A DNA stretch of 64,000 nucleotides, from positions 62,001-126,000 of IMG/VR virus record IMGVR_UViG_3300045971_000577. One strand, 5' to 3'. The translations under genes and the position numbers were made by a program. Shown here one piece after another: positions 11,570 to 58,427 of this stretch (position 1 is its first letter; each line of letters begins with the position of its first letter). Under the pieces are notes generated by a model, which made no database searches, was not told the origin of the DNA, and saw nothing but the letters and a program-made list of their open reading frames with translations.

Positions 11570-11759
11570 TCTTTTTACCTTTTAGTTTATCTACTACTTC
11601 TTGCATTTTGTACAGCTTCTTACATTCGAGTGGCATTCCTACGCTATGCACGACAGCAAAACATCTCGTACAACGATAGCTGATTCCGCTCTCAACGTCA
11701 AACTCCGCAATATTACCGCAGAGAAGAGTTACTTCCGGAAACTGACTATCAAGCGGCAT
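11553..11759 (-). CDS. small zinc-ribbon-like protein
   Basis: LLCG...YRCTRCFAVV.S.GMP.EC; ends QEVVDKLKGKK. Confidence 0.65.
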   Translation of the reverse strand: MPLDSQFPEVTLLCGNIAEFDVESGISYRCTRCFAVVHSVGMPLECKKLYKMQEVVDKLKGKKNDRYP

Positions 11760-12855
11760 CGTCGTCTTCTCTGCCGTACTCGGCATCTTCAGCGTTCATC
11801 ACCGCGGCCATTGCATCGATCAGTATGTGAAATCCGAGATGATCGGTACATTGGCCACCCGCGCCGGATTGCTTGACCCACATTTTTCGGGTATAACCCA
11901 TGTAGGAATTGATCCAAGCAGTGGTAAGCACTTCCTTGGCAAAAGTAGCGAGCTTGTCCCATTCGCCCAGTTCGCAGAGTTCATTTACAACCTCCAATAC
12001 ATCGATAAGACCGTATGTACTGGTAGAATCTCGCTTGAAACTATTCATCCACTTGCCAGCAACGCATGGATCATTCCACTCGAACACATCGCCGGTGAGT
12101 GACCTGAAGAACTTCTTCATTGATGGATAACCCATCCTTTGATCGTCGGGTACTGCTGCAAGTTCTTCTTCAATGCGCTTACGTTCGTCGGCTTGCTCCT
12201 TCAGTCGACGAATGTACTCGGGAATCGATGCCTCAAGATCCTTGAAGTAGAAGTGGTTGTAACTCTTCTCGTATCCGTGTGTACCTTTTCCTTCACCTTC
12301 GTATTCTTCGATATACCACTTGTCCATGATCGCCCGGAAAATGTCTCCGTGAACAATCACGTGCGTCACAGCACGGAAGTTGTCAACCTTCTTGAGCTTT
12401 GTTGCCAACCGGTCAAGTTCAAACTGCTGGGATTGGGTAAGACCTGCTTCGCCCCTTACTTTTTCGAGTTCGCGAAGATCGTACTCGTCGCTGTTGAAAT
12501 AAGGCGTGAACTGAATACCGAGACGATCTTCAAGATCGGCTTCGAACATCAACTCGACGTCGAAGTTTTTCTGGTTCACTTCGCAGTCATGGATGGAGTT
12601 GGGACCTTGTCCGAATTCGTACAGTTGTTGCCTCATTGCTTCGACTACAACATTCAGCCCGTGACCGTGGCAATCTTCAACCGCGCCGTAGTCGTTGTAC
12701 TTGCCGTAGAATGGGACAGGACACACATCGTACAGTGCATTCGAATAACAGAACGTCTTCGGTTCGTTGTTTTTCAGCAACATGAACACAGCAACATCCT
12801 GGCCGCTCATGACGTGCAGATTTGAAATCATACAAGTACCGTTCCAGCTACCGAT
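11749..12855 (-). CDS. hypothetical protein, probable ATC start
   Basis: Frame open upstream of track ATG (12831): AGGAG-N7-ATC GGT AGC TGG AAC GGT ACT TGT ATG (xGSWNGTCMISNL). Confidence 0.8.
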   Translation of the reverse strand: MGSWNGTCMISNLHVMSGQDVAVFMLLKNNEPKTFCYSNALYDVCPVPFYGKYNDYGAVEDCHGHGLNVVVEAMRQQLYEFGQGPNSIHDCEVNQKNFDVELMFEADLEDRLGIQFTPYFNSDEYDLRELEKVRGEAGLTQSQQFELDRLATKLKKVDNFRAVTHVIVHGDIFRAIMDKWYIEEYEGEGKGTHGYEKSYNHFYFKDLEASIPEYIRRLKEQADERKRIEEELAAVPDDQRMGYPSMKKFFRSLTGDVFEWNDPCVAGKWMNSFKRDSTSTYGLIDVLEVVNELCELGEWDKLATFAKEVLTTAWINSYMGYTRKMWVKQSGAGGQCTDHLGFHILIDAMAAVMNAEDAEYGREDDDAA

Positions 12856-37245: not shown

Positions 37246-40197
37246 TCAAAGTGCGCTGAAGTCAAACAAGGTTTCCAGGTGTGCATGTTCCTTGTTTGTG
37301 CGGGATAGATCCCAATTCAAACAACCAACAAGATTTTTTACCTTTTGGTCAACAATACCTGCCATCATGTCTTCGCTGTCAAATGGTAGATCTAGGAACC
37401 ATTGTGGCAAGTGAACTTCGTCTACAGGATACGCAATACTAGAAAGCCTGTTCTCTGGGGTTTCACGTAGCTTGCAAACAATAATCTTCTGTCCGTCAAT
37501 AATACGCATGGAGTGTTGATCCATGTGCATATCCTTCATCCTATTCCATGCAAGACTTGCTGTTACGTGTCCGGGTACATGTAGATTGCCTACTTCTTCG
37601 CCCTTCATTTTCATATGCATTGCGGCATCAACTTTATCACGATAATGCGACAGTTTATTCACAGCTCTCGGTGTGCCTTGTTGCCACGGTTTCATATCCT
37701 CAAACTTTTCCTTGAACTTTCTGATTTTTTCAATAATAAAGTTTTCGCCCTTATCGGTAAGTGTGTCCAATAGAATCTCAGATAGAAACTGTTGTACAAA
37801 CTTAGGAGTATCTGCACGCTTCAAGTCCAGGCCCATTGCCTTCACCTTGCCAGGCTTGCCACCGACGTCAAGCCTGATTCCGTCCTTGTCAAACATCAGA
37901 CAAGCGTAACGCTTCTTTACAATCCAAAGGCCGCTTTCGGAAATAGTTTCTCTTGAGCTCGCAATAACTCCAGTTGACCGTTTAATGGGCACGTTGAGTT
38001 TGGTATGTAAAAAATCCGGGAACGTTGCCGAGACCGCCCCGGCAAGTCCATTATACGTATCAATGATGGACTCCTTTGTCCACTCGACCTCACCAGAATC
38101 AATCTCCCTTCTAAGAACTGGATATGCTGAAAAGTAGCACGAGTCAGTATCTCCGTAGACAATTGCGTCACCATAATGGTCATAGTTCCCTGTAATCATT
38201 TCGTTTGTTTTAGCCGCCATATGCTTGGTAATGGTTCTACCAGTCAATGTTGTAGATTGTCCGAGACGCTGATCGAAGAAGCGGCTTCCTGCGTTCAGCA
38301 AGGCGCCGTAAGCAGAGTTCAAGTTGATCTTCTTTACTAGCTGTCTCTTATCCCAAAATCCGATAACGCGGCGCAGGACCTTCTGATCCCGACTGATTGC
38401 CTTACCGTCCTTTACCATAAGATTGTGTTGATTCATGTATTGAACTACACGCTTTTTATGCCCTTCTTCCAGTAGTTCTTTCAACTTTTTTGGTCTATAT
38501 GCTTCGGACTCTAGGTAGGGATTAGCCTTAGTCTCTACATCGCTGATATCGTCATTTATGAACAAATCTTGAGTTATTTTGACACCTTCGATCTTTGGAT
38601 TATCTTCAATATCAGTATAGTTAGTCATGATACCTTGAAGAGTCTTGCGCTCACTATACCAACGTGTCAACAGACCCGGAATTACACCGTCAATGTCAGT
38701 TCTGAAAATAGTACCGTTAGAACTAATACACCACGGCTGCCCGGATTGAAAAATCAGGTCACTAAGTTCTTTACCTGTGACCTCGAACTCCTGACCGTCT
38801 TCCATATCTAGTATTAGCTTAGTCCCGATATCCTTATCGTAAAACTCTTCCATTTCTAGTACATTGAATCTATCGTTCCACCAAGATGCGAATGTATATT
38901 TCGCGCCCTTGCGTTCCCAGTCTGCAATAGCCTGATTTGTGCGATCAAGTCTAATCTGTCCAACAATAGTTTCTGGACTCATATTTAGCGTTCTAATAAC
39001 TGATGGATACAGCGACTTCATGTCAGTTGATGCAATCCACTTATGTAGCCCACGCTTCGGTGTAGCAACCCAACCGCCTGCCGCACGATTTGCTTCGCTT
39101 TCTTTGCCGTGCTTCTTATCAGGGCAAACCATATTACGGTTGTGAGCTTCCATAAGAACATTCTGGTCTGTAACTGCAACCGCGCCCATTGTAGTCTGAA
39201 TAAGAACACAGCTCGAATGGGCAATGGAACTTGCCAAATCAACGAACTGTAATTTTTTATCGAGTTTATCGAGAAGTCGGGTATCTTGGATGTTATACTC
39301 TAAGAACTTCTTAAAGTCGTCGTTATACAACTCATCCAATGTACCTTCGTACTCAACCTTTGTATCGCCTAGTTCAATTTCTGCAATTGAGTTTAGCTTG
39401 TAGCTGTGGCGCTCTTCATAGTTGTACTTCTTGTACAATTCAAGGTAGTCAACGTGTACACGACCGATAAGGTCATACGTAGGTTCTACCTTGCCGCCGC
39501 GTTCGATTTCACGAACCTTAGGTTGTTGTTCCCATAGGCATAATCTGCGTGCTTCTTGCTTACCAAGAATACGCTTGATTCTATTTACTACATACGGAAT
39601 ATCGTAAAATGAACTGTTCCAGCCGCTTAGTACATCTGCGTCTTCAATAACGTCCATAAATGCATTCAACATATCCCCTTCTTTTTCGAAGAGAACCACA
39701 TTACCGACTTGGTCTGCTATTTCTTGTGCTTCATCCCACGTAAGTGTCTCCGGTGGTATTGCTAGACAGATAATTTCATCTAACCATTGTAGATGTACAG
39801 AGATAGATGTAATAGAGTTCTTTGCATCTGCAGGATCCGACCAGCCAAAGTCTTTATCAAAGCTGGTTTCAATGTCGAAAAATGCTACATGAAGTGCAGG
39901 TGCGTCAATGTGCTGATAGTTGTGCTCGAGACAACGGAAAACAGGATCCACATCCGTTTCCCACTTCTTCACATTGTGAGAAAGTGTCTTAACAAGCTTT
40001 TGTTTTTCAGCGTATGTGCGTGGAACAACCTTCTTTACTGTATCGCCGTAGATAGACTTATTAGTCCCTCTCGGATCGTTTATAAAAAAGTGATAGTCAG
40101 GTGCGTATTCCTTGTAAACTCTCTTACCGTTTACTCTTTCAACAATCCTGATTAGTTCTGATTCGCCGCTCTTCTTGAAAAATGCGTCAACGTAGAT
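37246..40197 (-). CDS. family B DNA polymerase (983 aa, probable ATC start)
   Basis: Exo FDIET, GWNS..YDIPY, YNIQD; pol DMKSLYPS, KINLNSAYG, YGDTDS, KKRY; frame continues 75 codons upstream of the track GTG to ATC TAC GTT GAC GCA after AAGGGG. Confidence 0.95.
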   Translation of the reverse strand: MYVDAFFKKSGESELIRIVERVNGKRVYKEYAPDYHFFINDPRGTNKSIYGDTVKKVVPRTYAEKQKLVKTLSHNVKKWETDVDPVFRCLEHNYQHIDAPALHVAFFDIETSFDKDFGWSDPADAKNSITSISVHLQWLDEIICLAIPPETLTWDEAQEIADQVGNVVLFEKEGDMLNAFMDVIEDADVLSGWNSSFYDIPYVVNRIKRILGKQEARRLCLWEQQPKVREIERGGKVEPTYDLIGRVHVDYLELYKKYNYEERHSYKLNSIAEIELGDTKVEYEGTLDELYNDDFKKFLEYNIQDTRLLDKLDKKLQFVDLASSIAHSSCVLIQTTMGAVAVTDQNVLMEAHNRNMVCPDKKHGKESEANRAAGGWVATPKRGLHKWIASTDMKSLYPSVIRTLNMSPETIVGQIRLDRTNQAIADWERKGAKYTFASWWNDRFNVLEMEEFYDKDIGTKLILDMEDGQEFEVTGKELSDLIFQSGQPWCISSNGTIFRTDIDGVIPGLLTRWYSERKTLQGIMTNYTDIEDNPKIEGVKITQDLFINDDISDVETKANPYLESEAYRPKKLKELLEEGHKKRVVQYMNQHNLMVKDGKAISRDQKVLRRVIGFWDKRQLVKKINLNSAYGALLNAGSRFFDQRLGQSTTLTGRTITKHMAAKTNEMITGNYDHYGDAIVYGDTDSCYFSAYPVLRREIDSGEVEWTKESIIDTYNGLAGAVSATFPDFLHTKLNVPIKRSTGVIASSRETISESGLWIVKKRYACLMFDKDGIRLDVGGKPGKVKAMGLDLKRADTPKFVQQFLSEILLDTLTDKGENFIIEKIRKFKEKFEDMKPWQQGTPRAVNKLSHYRDKVDAAMHMKMKGEEVGNLHVPGHVTASLAWNRMKDMHMDQHSMRIIDGQKIIVCKLRETPENRLSSIAYPVDEVHLPQWFLDLPFDSEDMMAGIVDQKVKNLVGCLNWDLSRTNKEHAHLETLFDFSAL

Positions 40198-40208
40198 AGC
40201 AGTTCCCC

Positions 40209-40460
40209 TTAACCTAGGCCACCGGCCTTGTACAGATCTTCGAGCTCGTCAAAAGCTTCGCGCTGATCGTTCATGGTGCCCTTTTGGACAATCTTGATAA
40301 GTTTGTTTAGTTGTGCTGGCTTGACTTCAAGCTCTTCTGCGATGGCGGAAACAGTATCCTTTAGACCCTCTTTTAGATCCTCTATTTCTTGCATCACCTG
40401 TACACCATCAGCTACCAGTTGCTTCAATCTGGCCACGTTTTCAGGGCTTAGTTTCGCCAT
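40209..40460 (-). CDS. DsbA-like dsDNA-binding protein
   Basis: Helical 83 aa, RLKQL...V.QEIEDLKE.LKD....IAEELEVKP..LNK.IK pattern as in T4 DsbA/GapR-like proteins. Confidence 0.65.
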   Translation of the reverse strand: MAKLSPENVARLKQLVADGVQVMQEIEDLKEGLKDTVSAIAEELEVKPAQLNKLIKIVQKGTMNDQREAFDELEDLYKAGGLG

Positions 40461-40473
40461 TTTCTTTTTCCTT

Positions 40474-41136
40474 TCATTCAGTTTCCCATTTTTCTATTAG
40501 ATTATAGCCGGCGGCTCTTATCTTATTACTTCGTGCCTGTGTCCTACCGTTCAGATCACCGAATGATATTTTTGATACACGATTTATATCTGTTGAATTG
40601 AATCGATTTAGATTTCCGTGCCAAAAATCTCCATAAAATTCATATACGGTGTTTGATTCCGAGTCATAAGCATCGACCTTATATTTCTTACTATCAATAA
40701 TGATAGTCTTCTGCCTATGTTCGTGTGGTATATTTATAGAATCTAACCAGGCTGATTCTGATTTCGATACGTTGACACAACACTTCGGGCAGCCGCTTCC
40801 TCTAAGATGTACGTGTGGATTTTGTAAAAATAATCCGTGCGCTGGACATACTATTGATACCTTCTTACCAAATACTGTATTAGAATAATCGAATTTATTT
40901 TTATGTACAATCTGTGCCCGCTGTATAAAACTACGAGTATCTAAGTCGGCACAGATATTGCATCCTGCCTTATTATAGAGATGATCGCTCGGTGTTTGGA
41001 AAAATTCACCGTGTATGCGACATATAATCTTTATTTTTGTTCGTACATTTTTATATTCTATCAAAGAATAATCATATCTATGCTCGTGTATTTTGTTAGC
41101 ACGTATGATAAATTCTCGTGTATCTAATCTTTTCAT
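40474..41136 (-). mobile_element. homing endonuclease (DUF723 repeats + Vsr/PD-(D/E)xK-like nuclease)
   Basis: FI.RA..IH..RYDYS..Y....KIKIIC..HG.F.Q.P..H...GC..C twice; VDAY....VYEFYGDFWHG; TTGACA-N17-TATAAT at 41142-41170. Confidence 0.85.
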
Positions 41137-41176
41137 AGCACATTATATGAAAAGTAACGCAAAATGTCAAGCGTTT

Positions 41177-41920: not shown

Positions 41921-41953
41921 ATGCTTATTTATCACAAAAGAGTGATAAAGTCA

Positions 41954-41977
41954 AAAGTAAAGGACCCGAGGGTCCTT
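41954..41977 (-). terminator. intrinsic terminator
   Basis: AAGGACCC-TC-GGGTCCTT hairpin followed by TACTTTT. Confidence 0.65.
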
Positions 41978-58038: not shown

Positions 58039-58206
58039 TTATTTCTTTAACTTGGCTACACAGACGTATTTCGTTGCGCTCCACTGGTGGCCAGCGTCGA
58101 TGCAGGCTTTTCTTTCAGGAGCATGCGCTTCACCTAATGTTCCGGCCATTAGTATCATTGCACCGAGTGCAAGACCACCTATAACAAGGACTTGTAACCA
58201 GCTCAT
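58039..58206 (-). CDS. 55-aa membrane-anchored protein (below cutoff)
   Basis: Hand-translated [22 protein letters not shown]...ACIDAGHQW....VC. Confidence 0.65.
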
Positions 58207-58427
58207 TAGAAGCGATAGGTGATACGACCCATGTTCATGTCGTACGGACTCATCTCAATCTCAACTTCGTCGTCAAGAAGGATCTGAATATTGTTCTTGC
58301 GGATCTTGCCGCTGATAACTGCATTCAAGACATGCCCGTTCTCCAGTTTTACTTTGAAACGTGCTCCAGGGCTGGCATCTGTTACTCGGCCCTTAGTGAT
58401 GATCATATCGTCTTTGTCTTTACTCAA
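58206..58427 (-). CDS. infA: translation initiation factor IF-1
   Basis: G.V....[31 protein letters not shown]...GRITYR; TTG start. Confidence 0.95.

What the first reader, a model, noticed from the sequence alone, without database searches (positions are those of the whole stretch)
39973..40210. DNA polymerase appears to start at a non-canonical ATC codon
Seen: the polymerase frame continues 75 codons upstream of the first GTG (IYVDAFFKKSGESELIRIVERVNGKRVYKEY...), a typical PolB N-terminal domain. The only plausible start is ATC at 40197, 7 nt after AAGGGG. No in-frame ATG/GTG/TTG occurs before the upstream in-frame TGA near 40252. Established: AUU/AUC starts are weak and policed by IF3 (as for infC). 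Inference: a way to throttle or conditionally license polymerase synthesis; gene callers would truncate this gene.
Basis: partly seen in the sequence, partly recalled or inferred. Interest (0 to 1): 0.65.

Follow-up and report, generated by a model that had tools for sequence, protein, structure and literature searches.

The report
Phage DNA polymerase starts at AUC
The replicative DNA polymerase gene of this 369-kb pond jumbo phage very probably begins at a rare AUC codon behind a strong ribosome-binding site, and related phages use such weak start codons (AUU, AUC, AUA, CUG) repeatedly in this gene and a few others, so gene callers cut these proteins short.

Summary
On the minus strand the family-B polymerase frame is open from 40248. 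It has no in-frame ATG, GTG or TTG before GTG 39972. ATC 40197-40195 lies 7 nt after AAGGGG.

The ATC is very probably the real start:
- It aligns exactly with the ATG of cultured relatives (PA5oct, Phosso, a Vibrio phage).
- Contigs of a second pond metagenome from another study carry the same ATC.
- Codons 2-75 evolve under protein constraint.
- Of 57 distinct start contexts (56 related viral-contig contexts plus the window), the aligned codon is ATG 31, GTG 7, TTG 5, ATT 12, ATC 2. Every ATT/ATC locus has a Shine-Dalgarno site 5-7 nt upstream, an in-frame stop 6-69 nt upstream and no canonical start between.

The habit is not confined to the polymerase. This genome has at least two more ATC starts, one inside the window at 12855. 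A second gene family shows ATT, CTG and ATA starts, always with a much stronger Shine-Dalgarno site than its ATG members.

The public gene call does truncate the polymerase to 908 aa.

That the weak codon throttles or licenses polymerase synthesis remains inference. A weak codon compensated by a strong Shine-Dalgarno site is at least as likely. All six phage records of the clade that were checked encode IF1 and ribosomal protein bS21. This is a new member of a known kind, of moderate interest.

The parts
37246..40197 (-). Family-B (T4 gp43 / RB69-like) DNA polymerase gene, 983 codons counted from the ATC, stop codon included
   Evidence: Pfam DNA_pol_B_exo1 and DNA_pol_B. Colinear with RB69 gp43, residues 92-400 matching 97-419. 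54% identical to the PA5oct polymerase, with the match starting at residue 1. Motifs FDIET, SLYPS and YGDTDS are visible in the translation.
40195..40197 (-). ATC, proposed initiation codon (read as fMet)
   Evidence: Aligns with the ATG of PA5oct, Phosso and a Vibrio phage, and with ATG, GTG, TTG, ATT or ATC in the 56 other distinct start contexts from related viral contigs. Identical in contigs of a second sample and study and in IMG/VR fragment L076.
40204..40210 (-). Shine-Dalgarno site AAGGGGA, 6-7 nt before the ATC, overlapping the upstream stop codon
   Evidence: Predicted pairing with the 16S 3' end is -8.3 kcal/mol at spacing 6. Only 16% of genes in this genome reach -7. The region is not structured, z = +1.3.
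40249..40251 (-). In-frame TGA that closes the polymerase frame upstream
   Evidence: No ATG, GTG or TTG lies between it and the ATC.
39970..39972 (-). First canonical in-frame start (GTG), used by the public gene call; not the real start
   Evidence: ORF list. The gene is called as 908 aa on a Logan contig, leaving a 236-nt apparent gap. Codons 2-75 upstream of it are conserved as protein, with many synonymous differences.
40209..40460 (-). Upstream 83-aa DsbA-like gene, whose TAA stop lies 11 nt before the ATC
   Evidence: Pfam Phage_DsbA, just below the curated cut-off (24.8 against 25 bits). phrog_12534 and phrog_639. It uses ATG (one GTG) in 55 of 55 related loci. In most ATG-type relatives its stop overlaps the polymerase ATG, as TAATG.
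40474..41136 (-). 220-aa endonuclease-like gene (HNH / DUF723), first gene of the probable operon
   Evidence: phrog_681 and phrog_559. PF05265 on the public gene call.
41142..41170 (-). Perfect sigma-70-type promoter TTGACA-17-TATAAT, with the -10 element ending 5 nt before ATG 41136
   Evidence: 12 of 12 consensus match; sequence read directly. This is a consensus match only, and function is not shown.
11749..12855 (-). A second ATC-start gene in the window (368 aa, function unknown): TAGGAGA (12868-12862), 6 nt, then ATC 12855-12853
   Evidence: It reads I-GSWNGTC. Three homologues (L160-L162) begin ATG-GGA-TCA/TGT-TGG-AAC, that is MGSWNGTC or MGCWNKTC. The first canonical ATG is 8 codons downstream.
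58206..58427 (-). Phage-encoded translation initiation factor IF1 homologue; relevance to the start-codon habit is only speculative
   Evidence: PF01176, 67.7 bits, E = 2.5e-19. ORF. Present in all 5 related large contigs checked.

Best explanation
The polymerase is translated from AUC 40197, read by initiator tRNA as fMet. Three things would bring the 30S subunit there: the AAGGGGA Shine-Dalgarno site 6-7 nt upstream, an unstructured initiation region, and the stop codon of the DsbA-like gene 11 nt upstream, so that terminating ribosomes can re-initiate.

This is one case of a habit of this clade of ~360-385-kb environmental jumbo phages. About 0.3-1% of their conserved genes pair a near-cognate start (AUU most often, also AUA, CUG, AUC) with an unusually strong Shine-Dalgarno site. 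The polymerase and one 167-aa family (phrog_11279) are recurrent sites of this.

Shown here: the position and reality of the start codon, its recurrence, and its link to strong Shine-Dalgarno sites.

Inferred: the net effect on expression. The most likely effect is a moderate initiation rate that depends on fidelity factors such as IF3. That would limit polymerase synthesis, a goal T4 reaches differently through gp43 autorepression.
For: - The start codon aligns exactly with ATG in PA5oct, Phosso and a Vibrio phage.
- Across 57 distinct contexts the aligned codon is ATG 31, GTG 7, TTG 5, ATT 12, ATC 2.
- Every ATT/ATC locus has an in-frame stop 6-69 nt upstream and no canonical start between. 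In three loci only one codon (AAA) separates that stop from the ATT.
- The Shine-Dalgarno site scores -6.4 to -9.2 kcal/mol at 5-7 nt in all of the 12 ATT/ATC contexts scored.
- ATT/ATC is scattered over the polymerase tree, with at least 6 changes forced. It is also retained within diverged sister pairs: window/L005, L057/L058, L022/L072.
- Codons 2-75 show 15-31 synonymous against 17-22 non-synonymous codon differences to relatives.
- The ATC is identical in contigs from two pond samples of two studies.
- A third ATC start is validated by MGSWNGTC homologues.
- In the phrog_11279 family, near-cognate starts have a median Shine-Dalgarno score of -7.2 against -3.9 kcal/mol for ATG members.
- Ortholog mapping in four complete genomes gives 1-3 Shine-Dalgarno-backed near-cognate starts each.
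- Neighbouring genes use ATG throughout.
- In E. coli reporters, AUC and AUU initiate at about 1-2% of AUG and give an N-terminal Met (bioRxiv 10.1101/063800).
Against: - There is no protein, ribosome-profiling or RNA evidence. No RNA run holds the locus.
- The read check used assembled contigs, not raw reads, and one of the two runs may be the source of the window.
- The host is unknown, so the strength of AUC in it is unknown.
- Scatter on the tree could reflect recombination of a start module rather than repeated mutation.
- The Shine-Dalgarno comparison is not corrected for relatedness. In the polymerase family itself the ATG loci have equally strong G-rich stretches.
- All three near-cognate starts of this genome are ATC, while relatives almost always use ATT. 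This is unexplained.
Confidence: 0.85

Rival explanations
1. The ATC start is real but has no regulatory role. A weak codon plus a strong dedicated Shine-Dalgarno site is simply an equivalent-strength alternative to the ancestral arrangement, in which a TAATG overlap couples translation of the two genes. Lineages drift or recombine between the two.
For: Close relatives switch among ATG, GTG, TTG and ATT. Near-cognate starts always carry strong Shine-Dalgarno sites, and in phrog_11279 these are much stronger than at ATG members. ATG-type polymerase loci overlap the upstream stop, whereas ATT/ATC loci have an inserted Shine-Dalgarno and spacer module.
Against: In E. coli a Shine-Dalgarno site does not restore a near-cognate codon to AUG level (reporter data with a good ribosome-binding site). 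Near-cognate starts are concentrated in particular genes: 14 of 57 polymerase contexts against 0 of 55 for the neighbouring gene. That suggests gene-specific selection.
Confidence: 0.4
2. Assembly or sequencing error: the true codon is ATG.
For: The genome is assembled from a metagenome. Only contigs, not raw reads, could be laid.
Against: The ATC is identical in a second sample and study at depth about 6, and at depth about 38 in the probable source, and in fragment L076. Thirteen ATT or ATC loci from more than ten other metagenomes show the same design. Two further ATC starts occur in the same genome.
Confidence: 0.02
3. The polymerase starts at GTG 39972, and the 75 upstream codons are an untranslated remnant.
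For: This is the first canonical start, and the public gene call uses it.
Against: No good Shine-Dalgarno site was found among the canonical starts in the 40 codons from the GTG (best -4.4 kcal/mol). Codons 2-75 are conserved as protein with many synonymous changes. They correspond to the N-terminal domain present in RB69 gp43 and in all relatives from residue 1. In other ATT loci the first canonical codon lies anywhere from 17 to 175 codons downstream.
Confidence: 0.03
4. The N-terminus is supplied by a -1 frameshift or by readthrough from the upstream DsbA-like gene, giving a fusion protein.
For: In the window the two frames overlap openly between 40248 and 40212, and moving from the upstream frame to the polymerase frame requires a -1 shift.
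Against: That stretch contains no slippery X XXY YYZ heptamer (read directly). In relatives the upstream gene lies in different frames. In L009 and L058 the polymerase frame stays closed until after the upstream gene's stop, so no shift is possible there. In ATG-type relatives the two are plainly separate genes. The upstream in-frame stop is TGA, which the genome's CUA suppressor tRNA would not read.
Confidence: 0.02

Closest known systems
E. coli infC (IF3) and pcnB (poly(A) polymerase), the two confirmed AUU-start genes
   Same: A near-cognate AUH codon acts as the true start behind a Shine-Dalgarno site. Gene callers miss it. Initiation at such codons is expected to be weak and policed by IF3 (for the E. 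coli facts).
   Different: Here the codon is AUC, in a phage replicative polymerase. The same codon position varies among ATG, GTG, TTG, ATT and ATC across a clade. No autoregulatory logic such as that of infC is evident. IF3 dependence is untested.
T4 / RB69 gp43 autogenous translational repression (operator hairpin plus ribosome-binding site)
   Same: The same enzyme family. The same presumed aim of limiting polymerase synthesis at the initiation step (PMC3014915).
   Different: There is no operator-like hairpin. The region is less structured than shuffled controls. The limiting element would be the codon itself, not a repressor-RNA contact.
Streptomyces sigR GTC start repressed by IF3
   Same: A non-canonical start used as a regulatory handle through IF3 (PMC5472188; title and abstract seen).
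   Different: A different codon, organism and gene class. Regulation is demonstrated there and only inferred here.
Huge phages that encode IF1, bS21 and other translation parts (Al-Shayeb et al. 2020)
   Same: This genome and five relatives encode IF1 and bS21, as that paper describes for huge phages (PMC7162821).
   Different: That paper's text never mentions start codons. The link between these factors and near-cognate starts is my speculation.

Membership tests
Family-B DNA polymerase, T4 gp43 type | 3'-5' exonuclease domain and polymerase domain with catalytic motifs | tested here: met
   PF03104 (E = 7e-22) and PF00136 (E = 9e-28). FDIET, SLYPS and YGDTDS are present in the translation.
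Family-B DNA polymerase, T4 gp43 type | N-terminal domain colinear with solved gp43 structures | tested here: met
   Residues 92-400 align to RB69 gp43 residues 97-419. A start at the ATC gives an N-terminus 5 residues shorter than RB69. A start at the GTG would delete the equivalent of about 80 residues.
Genes with a near-cognate (AUU/AUC) initiation codon | No canonical start between the upstream in-frame stop and the conserved N-terminus | tested here: met
Genes with a near-cognate (AUU/AUC) initiation codon | The near-cognate codon occupies the position of the orthologues' AUG | tested here: met
Genes with a near-cognate (AUU/AUC) initiation codon | Shine-Dalgarno site at a functional spacing | tested here: met
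   -8.3 kcal/mol at spacing 6-7 nt.
Genes with a near-cognate (AUU/AUC) initiation codon | Protein N-terminus (fMet) mapped to that codon | not testable with these tools
   No proteome or ribosome-profiling data exist, and no RNA run holds the locus.
IF3-regulated starts (infC type) | Expression responds to IF3 level | not testable with these tools
   Needs reporter or in vitro assays. The phage encodes no IF3.
T4 gp43 translational operator | Conserved hairpin just upstream of, and overlapping, the ribosome-binding site | tested here: not met
   MFE -26.1 kcal/mol against a shuffled mean of -30.6, z = +1.29. No hairpin covers the Shine-Dalgarno site in the centroid structure.
Programmed -1 frameshift fusion (dnaX type) | Slippery heptamer in the overlap of the two frames, conserved in relatives | tested here: not met
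   No X XXY YYZ motif occurs in 40248-40212. The frame relations are not conserved, and a shift is impossible in L009 and L058.

The most novel reading that the evidence does not exclude
The IF1 and bS21 carried by every checked member of this clade might retune the 30S start-codon checkpoint in infected cells. Phage genes that pair a near-cognate start (AUC, AUU, AUA, CUG) with a strong Shine-Dalgarno site, the replicative polymerase among them, would then be translated efficiently only once the phage factors are present. This would amount to phage-controlled licensing through initiation fidelity. The apparently leaderless early transcripts of the same genome are another class sensitive to IF3, and they would fit the same scheme.
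Probability: 0.1. Interest if true: 0.85.

Novelty: new member of a known kind. Interest (0 to 1): 0.5.

Why it matters
- Annotation. Standard gene callers truncate the polymerase by 75 residues (shown). They also clip at least two other genes of this genome, and by the same logic the ATT/ATC-start polymerases of related contigs. This distorts protein catalogues and structure predictions for uncultured jumbo phages.
- Biology. A replicative polymerase whose start codon flips among ATG, GTG, TTG, ATT and ATC within one clade, with near-cognate codons always tied to strong Shine-Dalgarno sites, is a natural series of variants. It could be used to study how start-codon and Shine-Dalgarno strength trade off.
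- Testable question. In phages that bring their own IF1 and bS21, one can ask whether phage-encoded initiation factors change start-codon fidelity.

Tried and rejected
- DNA-level search of the start region against cultured phage genomes found nothing. Only protein-level relatives exist, at 54% identity or less.
- Literature searches for AUU/ATT-start phage polymerases returned no precedent. The library is incomplete, so this is weak evidence of novelty.
- A T4-like operator hairpin was looked for and not found.
- Frameshift or readthrough from the upstream gene was rejected.
- A phage-encoded initiator tRNA was looked for. None of the three tRNA-Met(CAT) genes has the three G-C pairs of an initiator anticodon stem.
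- Phage-encoded IF3 was searched for and is absent.
- My first impression that ATG-type polymerase loci lack a Shine-Dalgarno site was wrong. G-rich codons at the end of the upstream gene score as strongly as the ATT/ATC sites. The link between Shine-Dalgarno strength and codon type is clear only in the phrog_11279 family.
- In the genome-wide ortholog mapping, several near-cognate hits had no Shine-Dalgarno site and a canonical ATG or TTG 3-6 codons downstream. I discarded them as mapping noise.
- The large protein searches, structure prediction and complex prediction were not used. They were not needed for the question.
Full report
**Where the window lies.** The window is bases 62001-126000 of a 369,145-bp viral contig with direct terminal repeats, estimated 100% complete. 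Runs that hold it are pond metagenomes. The nearest cultured relatives of its polymerase are jumbo phages: PA5oct (54% over residues 1-686), Phosso (43%), a Vibrio phage (40%), and the 121Q/RaK2 group (38%).

**The observation.** The gene is on the minus strand.
- The polymerase frame is closed by TGA at 40251-40249.
- There is no in-frame ATG, GTG or TTG until GTG 39972.
- ATC sits at 40197-40195, 75 codons upstream of that GTG.
- AAGGGG (40210-40205) precedes the ATC by 7 nt and overlaps the TAA stop (40211-40209) of an 83-aa DsbA-like gene.

ATG, GTG and TTG make 5.1% of internal codons in this genome. Seventy-five coding codons without one therefore has a probability of about 0.02. In a rough call of 433 genes, only this gene and one other carry a long start-less extension that scores as coding.

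**Is the ATC the start?**
- In PA5oct the annotated polymerase begins ATG-TAC-ATC-GAT. In Phosso it begins ATG-TCA-TAC-GTA-GAC-GCG. In the Vibrio phage an ATG-TAT-ATT-GAC-GCA sits behind AAGGAG. The window reads ATC-TAC-GTT-GAC-GCA, so the ATC occupies the homologues' ATG position.
- A scan of IMG/VR returned 74 related loci, mostly 75-86% identical over the first 499 residues.
- Counting distinct start contexts, window included, the aligned codon is ATG 31, GTG 7, TTG 5, ATT 12 and ATC 2. The second ATC is in L078, a distant relative at 51% identity that reads ATC-TCC-TAC-GTT, comparable to Phosso's M-S-Y-V-D.
- Every ATT/ATC locus has an in-frame stop 6-69 nt upstream with no canonical start between. 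In L009, L057 and L058 only one codon (AAA) separates that stop from the ATT. The next canonical codon lies 17 to 175 codons downstream.
- All 12 scored ATT/ATC contexts have a Shine-Dalgarno site of -6.4 to -9.2 kcal/mol at 5-7 nt.
- Codons 2-75 differ from relatives by 15-31 synonymous against 17-22 non-synonymous codon changes, so they are translated.
- RB69 gp43 aligns from its residue 97 to residue 92 here. A start at the ATC therefore gives a normal N-terminal domain, while a start at the GTG would delete it.

**Is it an error?** Logan contigs of the probable source run (depth about 38) cover the codon with no differences. So do contigs of a second pond sample from another study (depth about 6; one contig spans 39604-41500). 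A separate IMG/VR fragment, L076, is identical over 3,135 bases. These are contigs, not raw reads. Even so, with ATT or ATC in more than ten other metagenomes, an error is very unlikely.

**Other routes to the N-terminus.**
- A -1 shift from the DsbA-like frame is formally possible between 40248 and 40212, but that stretch has no slippery heptamer.
- In relatives the upstream gene lies in varying frames.
- In L009 and L058 the polymerase frame stays closed until after the upstream gene's stop, so a shift is impossible there.
- In ATG-type relatives the two genes are separate, usually with a TAATG overlap.

**Evolutionary pattern.** On a quick maximum-likelihood tree of 68 rows, ATT/ATC needs 10 changes by parsimony, and at least 6 are forced by well-supported branches. 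The window's nearest rows are L005 (ATT, 87% identity, same TAAGGGGAAC module) and L006 (ATG placed directly after TAA). ATT/ATC is also kept within diverged sister pairs (L057/L058, L022/L072). It is therefore stable rather than a transient defect. Recombination of the short Shine-Dalgarno and start module could inflate the change count.

The neighbouring genes behave differently. The DsbA-like gene uses ATG (once GTG) in 55 of 55 contexts. The 252-aa gene upstream uses a conserved ATG. The polymerase's 14 of 57 near-cognate contexts is therefore gene-specific (Fisher p of about 5e-5, run on 14 of 56).

**It is not only the polymerase.**
- The other start-less gene of the genome (G000:190199-190711, minus strand, outside the window) reads TGAGGTGCTAAA-ATC. 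It matches phrog_11279 from profile position 2.
- Among 57 distinct relatives of that gene, the aligned codon is ATG 43, ATT 6, CTG 3, ATA 2, TTG 2 and GTG 1. Each near-cognate case has an in-frame stop 12-48 nt upstream.
- In that family the near-cognate members have far stronger Shine-Dalgarno sites than the ATG members: median -7.2 against -3.9 kcal/mol, Mann-Whitney p = 9e-8, not corrected for relatedness.
- Inside the window, the 368-aa gene at 11749-12855 (minus strand) reads TAGGAGA, 6 nt, then ATC-GGT-AGC-TGG-AAC. Its three homologues begin ATG-GGA-TCA/TGT-TGG-AAC, that is MGSWNGTC or MGCWNKTC.
- I fetched three complete relatives and mapped orthologous starts. Shine-Dalgarno-backed near-cognate starts number 3 in this genome (all ATC), 3 in G001 (ATA, ATT, ATT), 1 in G002 (ATT) and 2 in G003 (ATA, and the polymerase ATT). 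Each genome has about 280-340 conserved ORFs.
- Only 16% of this genome's genes have a Shine-Dalgarno site as strong as -7 kcal/mol.

**Mechanism.**
- Shown: the position of the start, its recurrence, and its association with strong Shine-Dalgarno sites.
- Established elsewhere: in E. coli reporters AUC and AUU initiate at 1-2% of AUG and yield an N-terminal Met, and infC and pcnB are the confirmed AUU genes. T4 and RB69 polymerases limit their own translation through an RNA operator.
- Inferred: here the weak codon, partly offset by the Shine-Dalgarno site and perhaps by re-initiation after the TAA 11 nt upstream, sets a moderate initiation rate that is sensitive to fidelity factors.
- I found no operator-like structure. 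The region is less folded than shuffled controls.
- A perfect TTGACA-17-TATAAT promoter at 41170-41142 probably drives an operon of the endonuclease-like gene, the DsbA-like gene and the polymerase.
- Whether the design throttles the polymerase or is merely an equivalent alternative to the coupled TAATG arrangement cannot be decided without assays.

**A speculative link.** The genome encodes an IF1 homologue inside the window (58206-58427, minus strand) and a bS21 homologue, but no IF3. All five related large contigs checked have both IF1 and bS21. Such genes are known in huge phages, but the paper describing them never mentions start codons. That these factors alter start-codon fidelity is possible but unsupported.

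**Gene calling.** The public call on the 23-kb Logan contig lists the polymerase as 908 aa from the GTG, with a 236-nt gap after the DsbA-like gene.

**Verdict.** The ATC start is real with about 0.85 confidence. It is a new member of a known kind (near-cognate initiation), set in a clade-wide pattern that appears undescribed in the literature I could search.

Noticed in passing
window 11749-12855 (-), ATC at 12855-12853: A second gene in the window with an ATC start behind TAGGAGA. Homologues begin MGSWNGTC or MGCWNKTC with ATG at the aligned codon. A gene caller would start 8 codons late, at ATG 12831.
   Followed up: yes
G000:190199-190711 (-), outside the window (locus L079:700-1212): A third ATC-start gene (phrog_11279, 167 aa, function unknown). 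Its family shows ATT, CTG and ATA starts in 11 of 57 distinct relatives, always with a strong Shine-Dalgarno site.
   Followed up: yes
whole genome G000, compared with relatives: All three Shine-Dalgarno-backed near-cognate starts of this genome are ATC. About 29 such starts in relatives include only one ATC (Fisher p of about 8e-4). The lineage-specific preference for AUC over AUU is unexplained.
   Followed up: partly
window 58206-58427 (-): Phage-encoded translation initiation factor IF1 homologue (PF01176, 67.7 bits). It probably has a TTG start behind GAGGA. It is present in all five related large contigs checked.
   Followed up: partly
G000:149512-149664 (-), outside the window (locus L163:1438-1728): Ribosomal protein bS21 homologue of 96 aa with an N-terminal extension, next to a ClpX-like gene (my reading of its sequence; not scanned against any family library). 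bS21 is present in all five related large contigs.
   Followed up: partly
window 41142-41170 (-) and 41926-41958 (-): Sigma-70-type promoters whose -10 element ends 5 nt before the ATG of the next gene (ATG 41136 and ATG 41920). This suggests leaderless or nearly leaderless transcripts. Seven of 33 TTGAC-N16-18-TAnnnT sites in the genome that have a downstream ORF show a start codon 5-6 nt after the -10. The second site is conserved in most relatives, and the true start of that gene is probably ATG 41920 rather than GTG 41935.
   Followed up: partly
G000:255570-255644 (-) and G000:261189-261528 (-), outside the window: The genome carries 47 tRNA genes, including a CUA-anticodon (amber suppressor type) tRNA, and a tmRNA. 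I did not examine whether TAG is recoded late in infection.
   Followed up: no
loci L062 and L073, about codon 10 of the polymerase: Two related contigs have a +1 frame break at an A-run (AAAAAAGG / AAAAAGGG) just after the conserved YID..Y N-terminus. In each, an ATG or TTG in the new frame lies nearby. This could be a homopolymer error, a remodelled N-terminus or a frameshift; it is unresolved.
   Followed up: partly
loci L044 and L072, polymerase codons 374 and 286: In-frame stop codons lie inside the polymerase reading frame of two relatives. The gene may be split, carry an insertion, or contain an assembly error. PA5oct's polymerase is likewise followed by a homing-endonuclease gene, and its match lies in two places.
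   Followed up: no
window 40474-41136 (-): A 220-aa HNH/DUF723 endonuclease-like gene with its own consensus promoter sits upstream of the DsbA-like gene and the polymerase. Only two of the related loci showed a clear homologue (L005 at 42%, L023 at 35% identity), as expected of a mobile homing-endonuclease insertion.
   Followed up: partly
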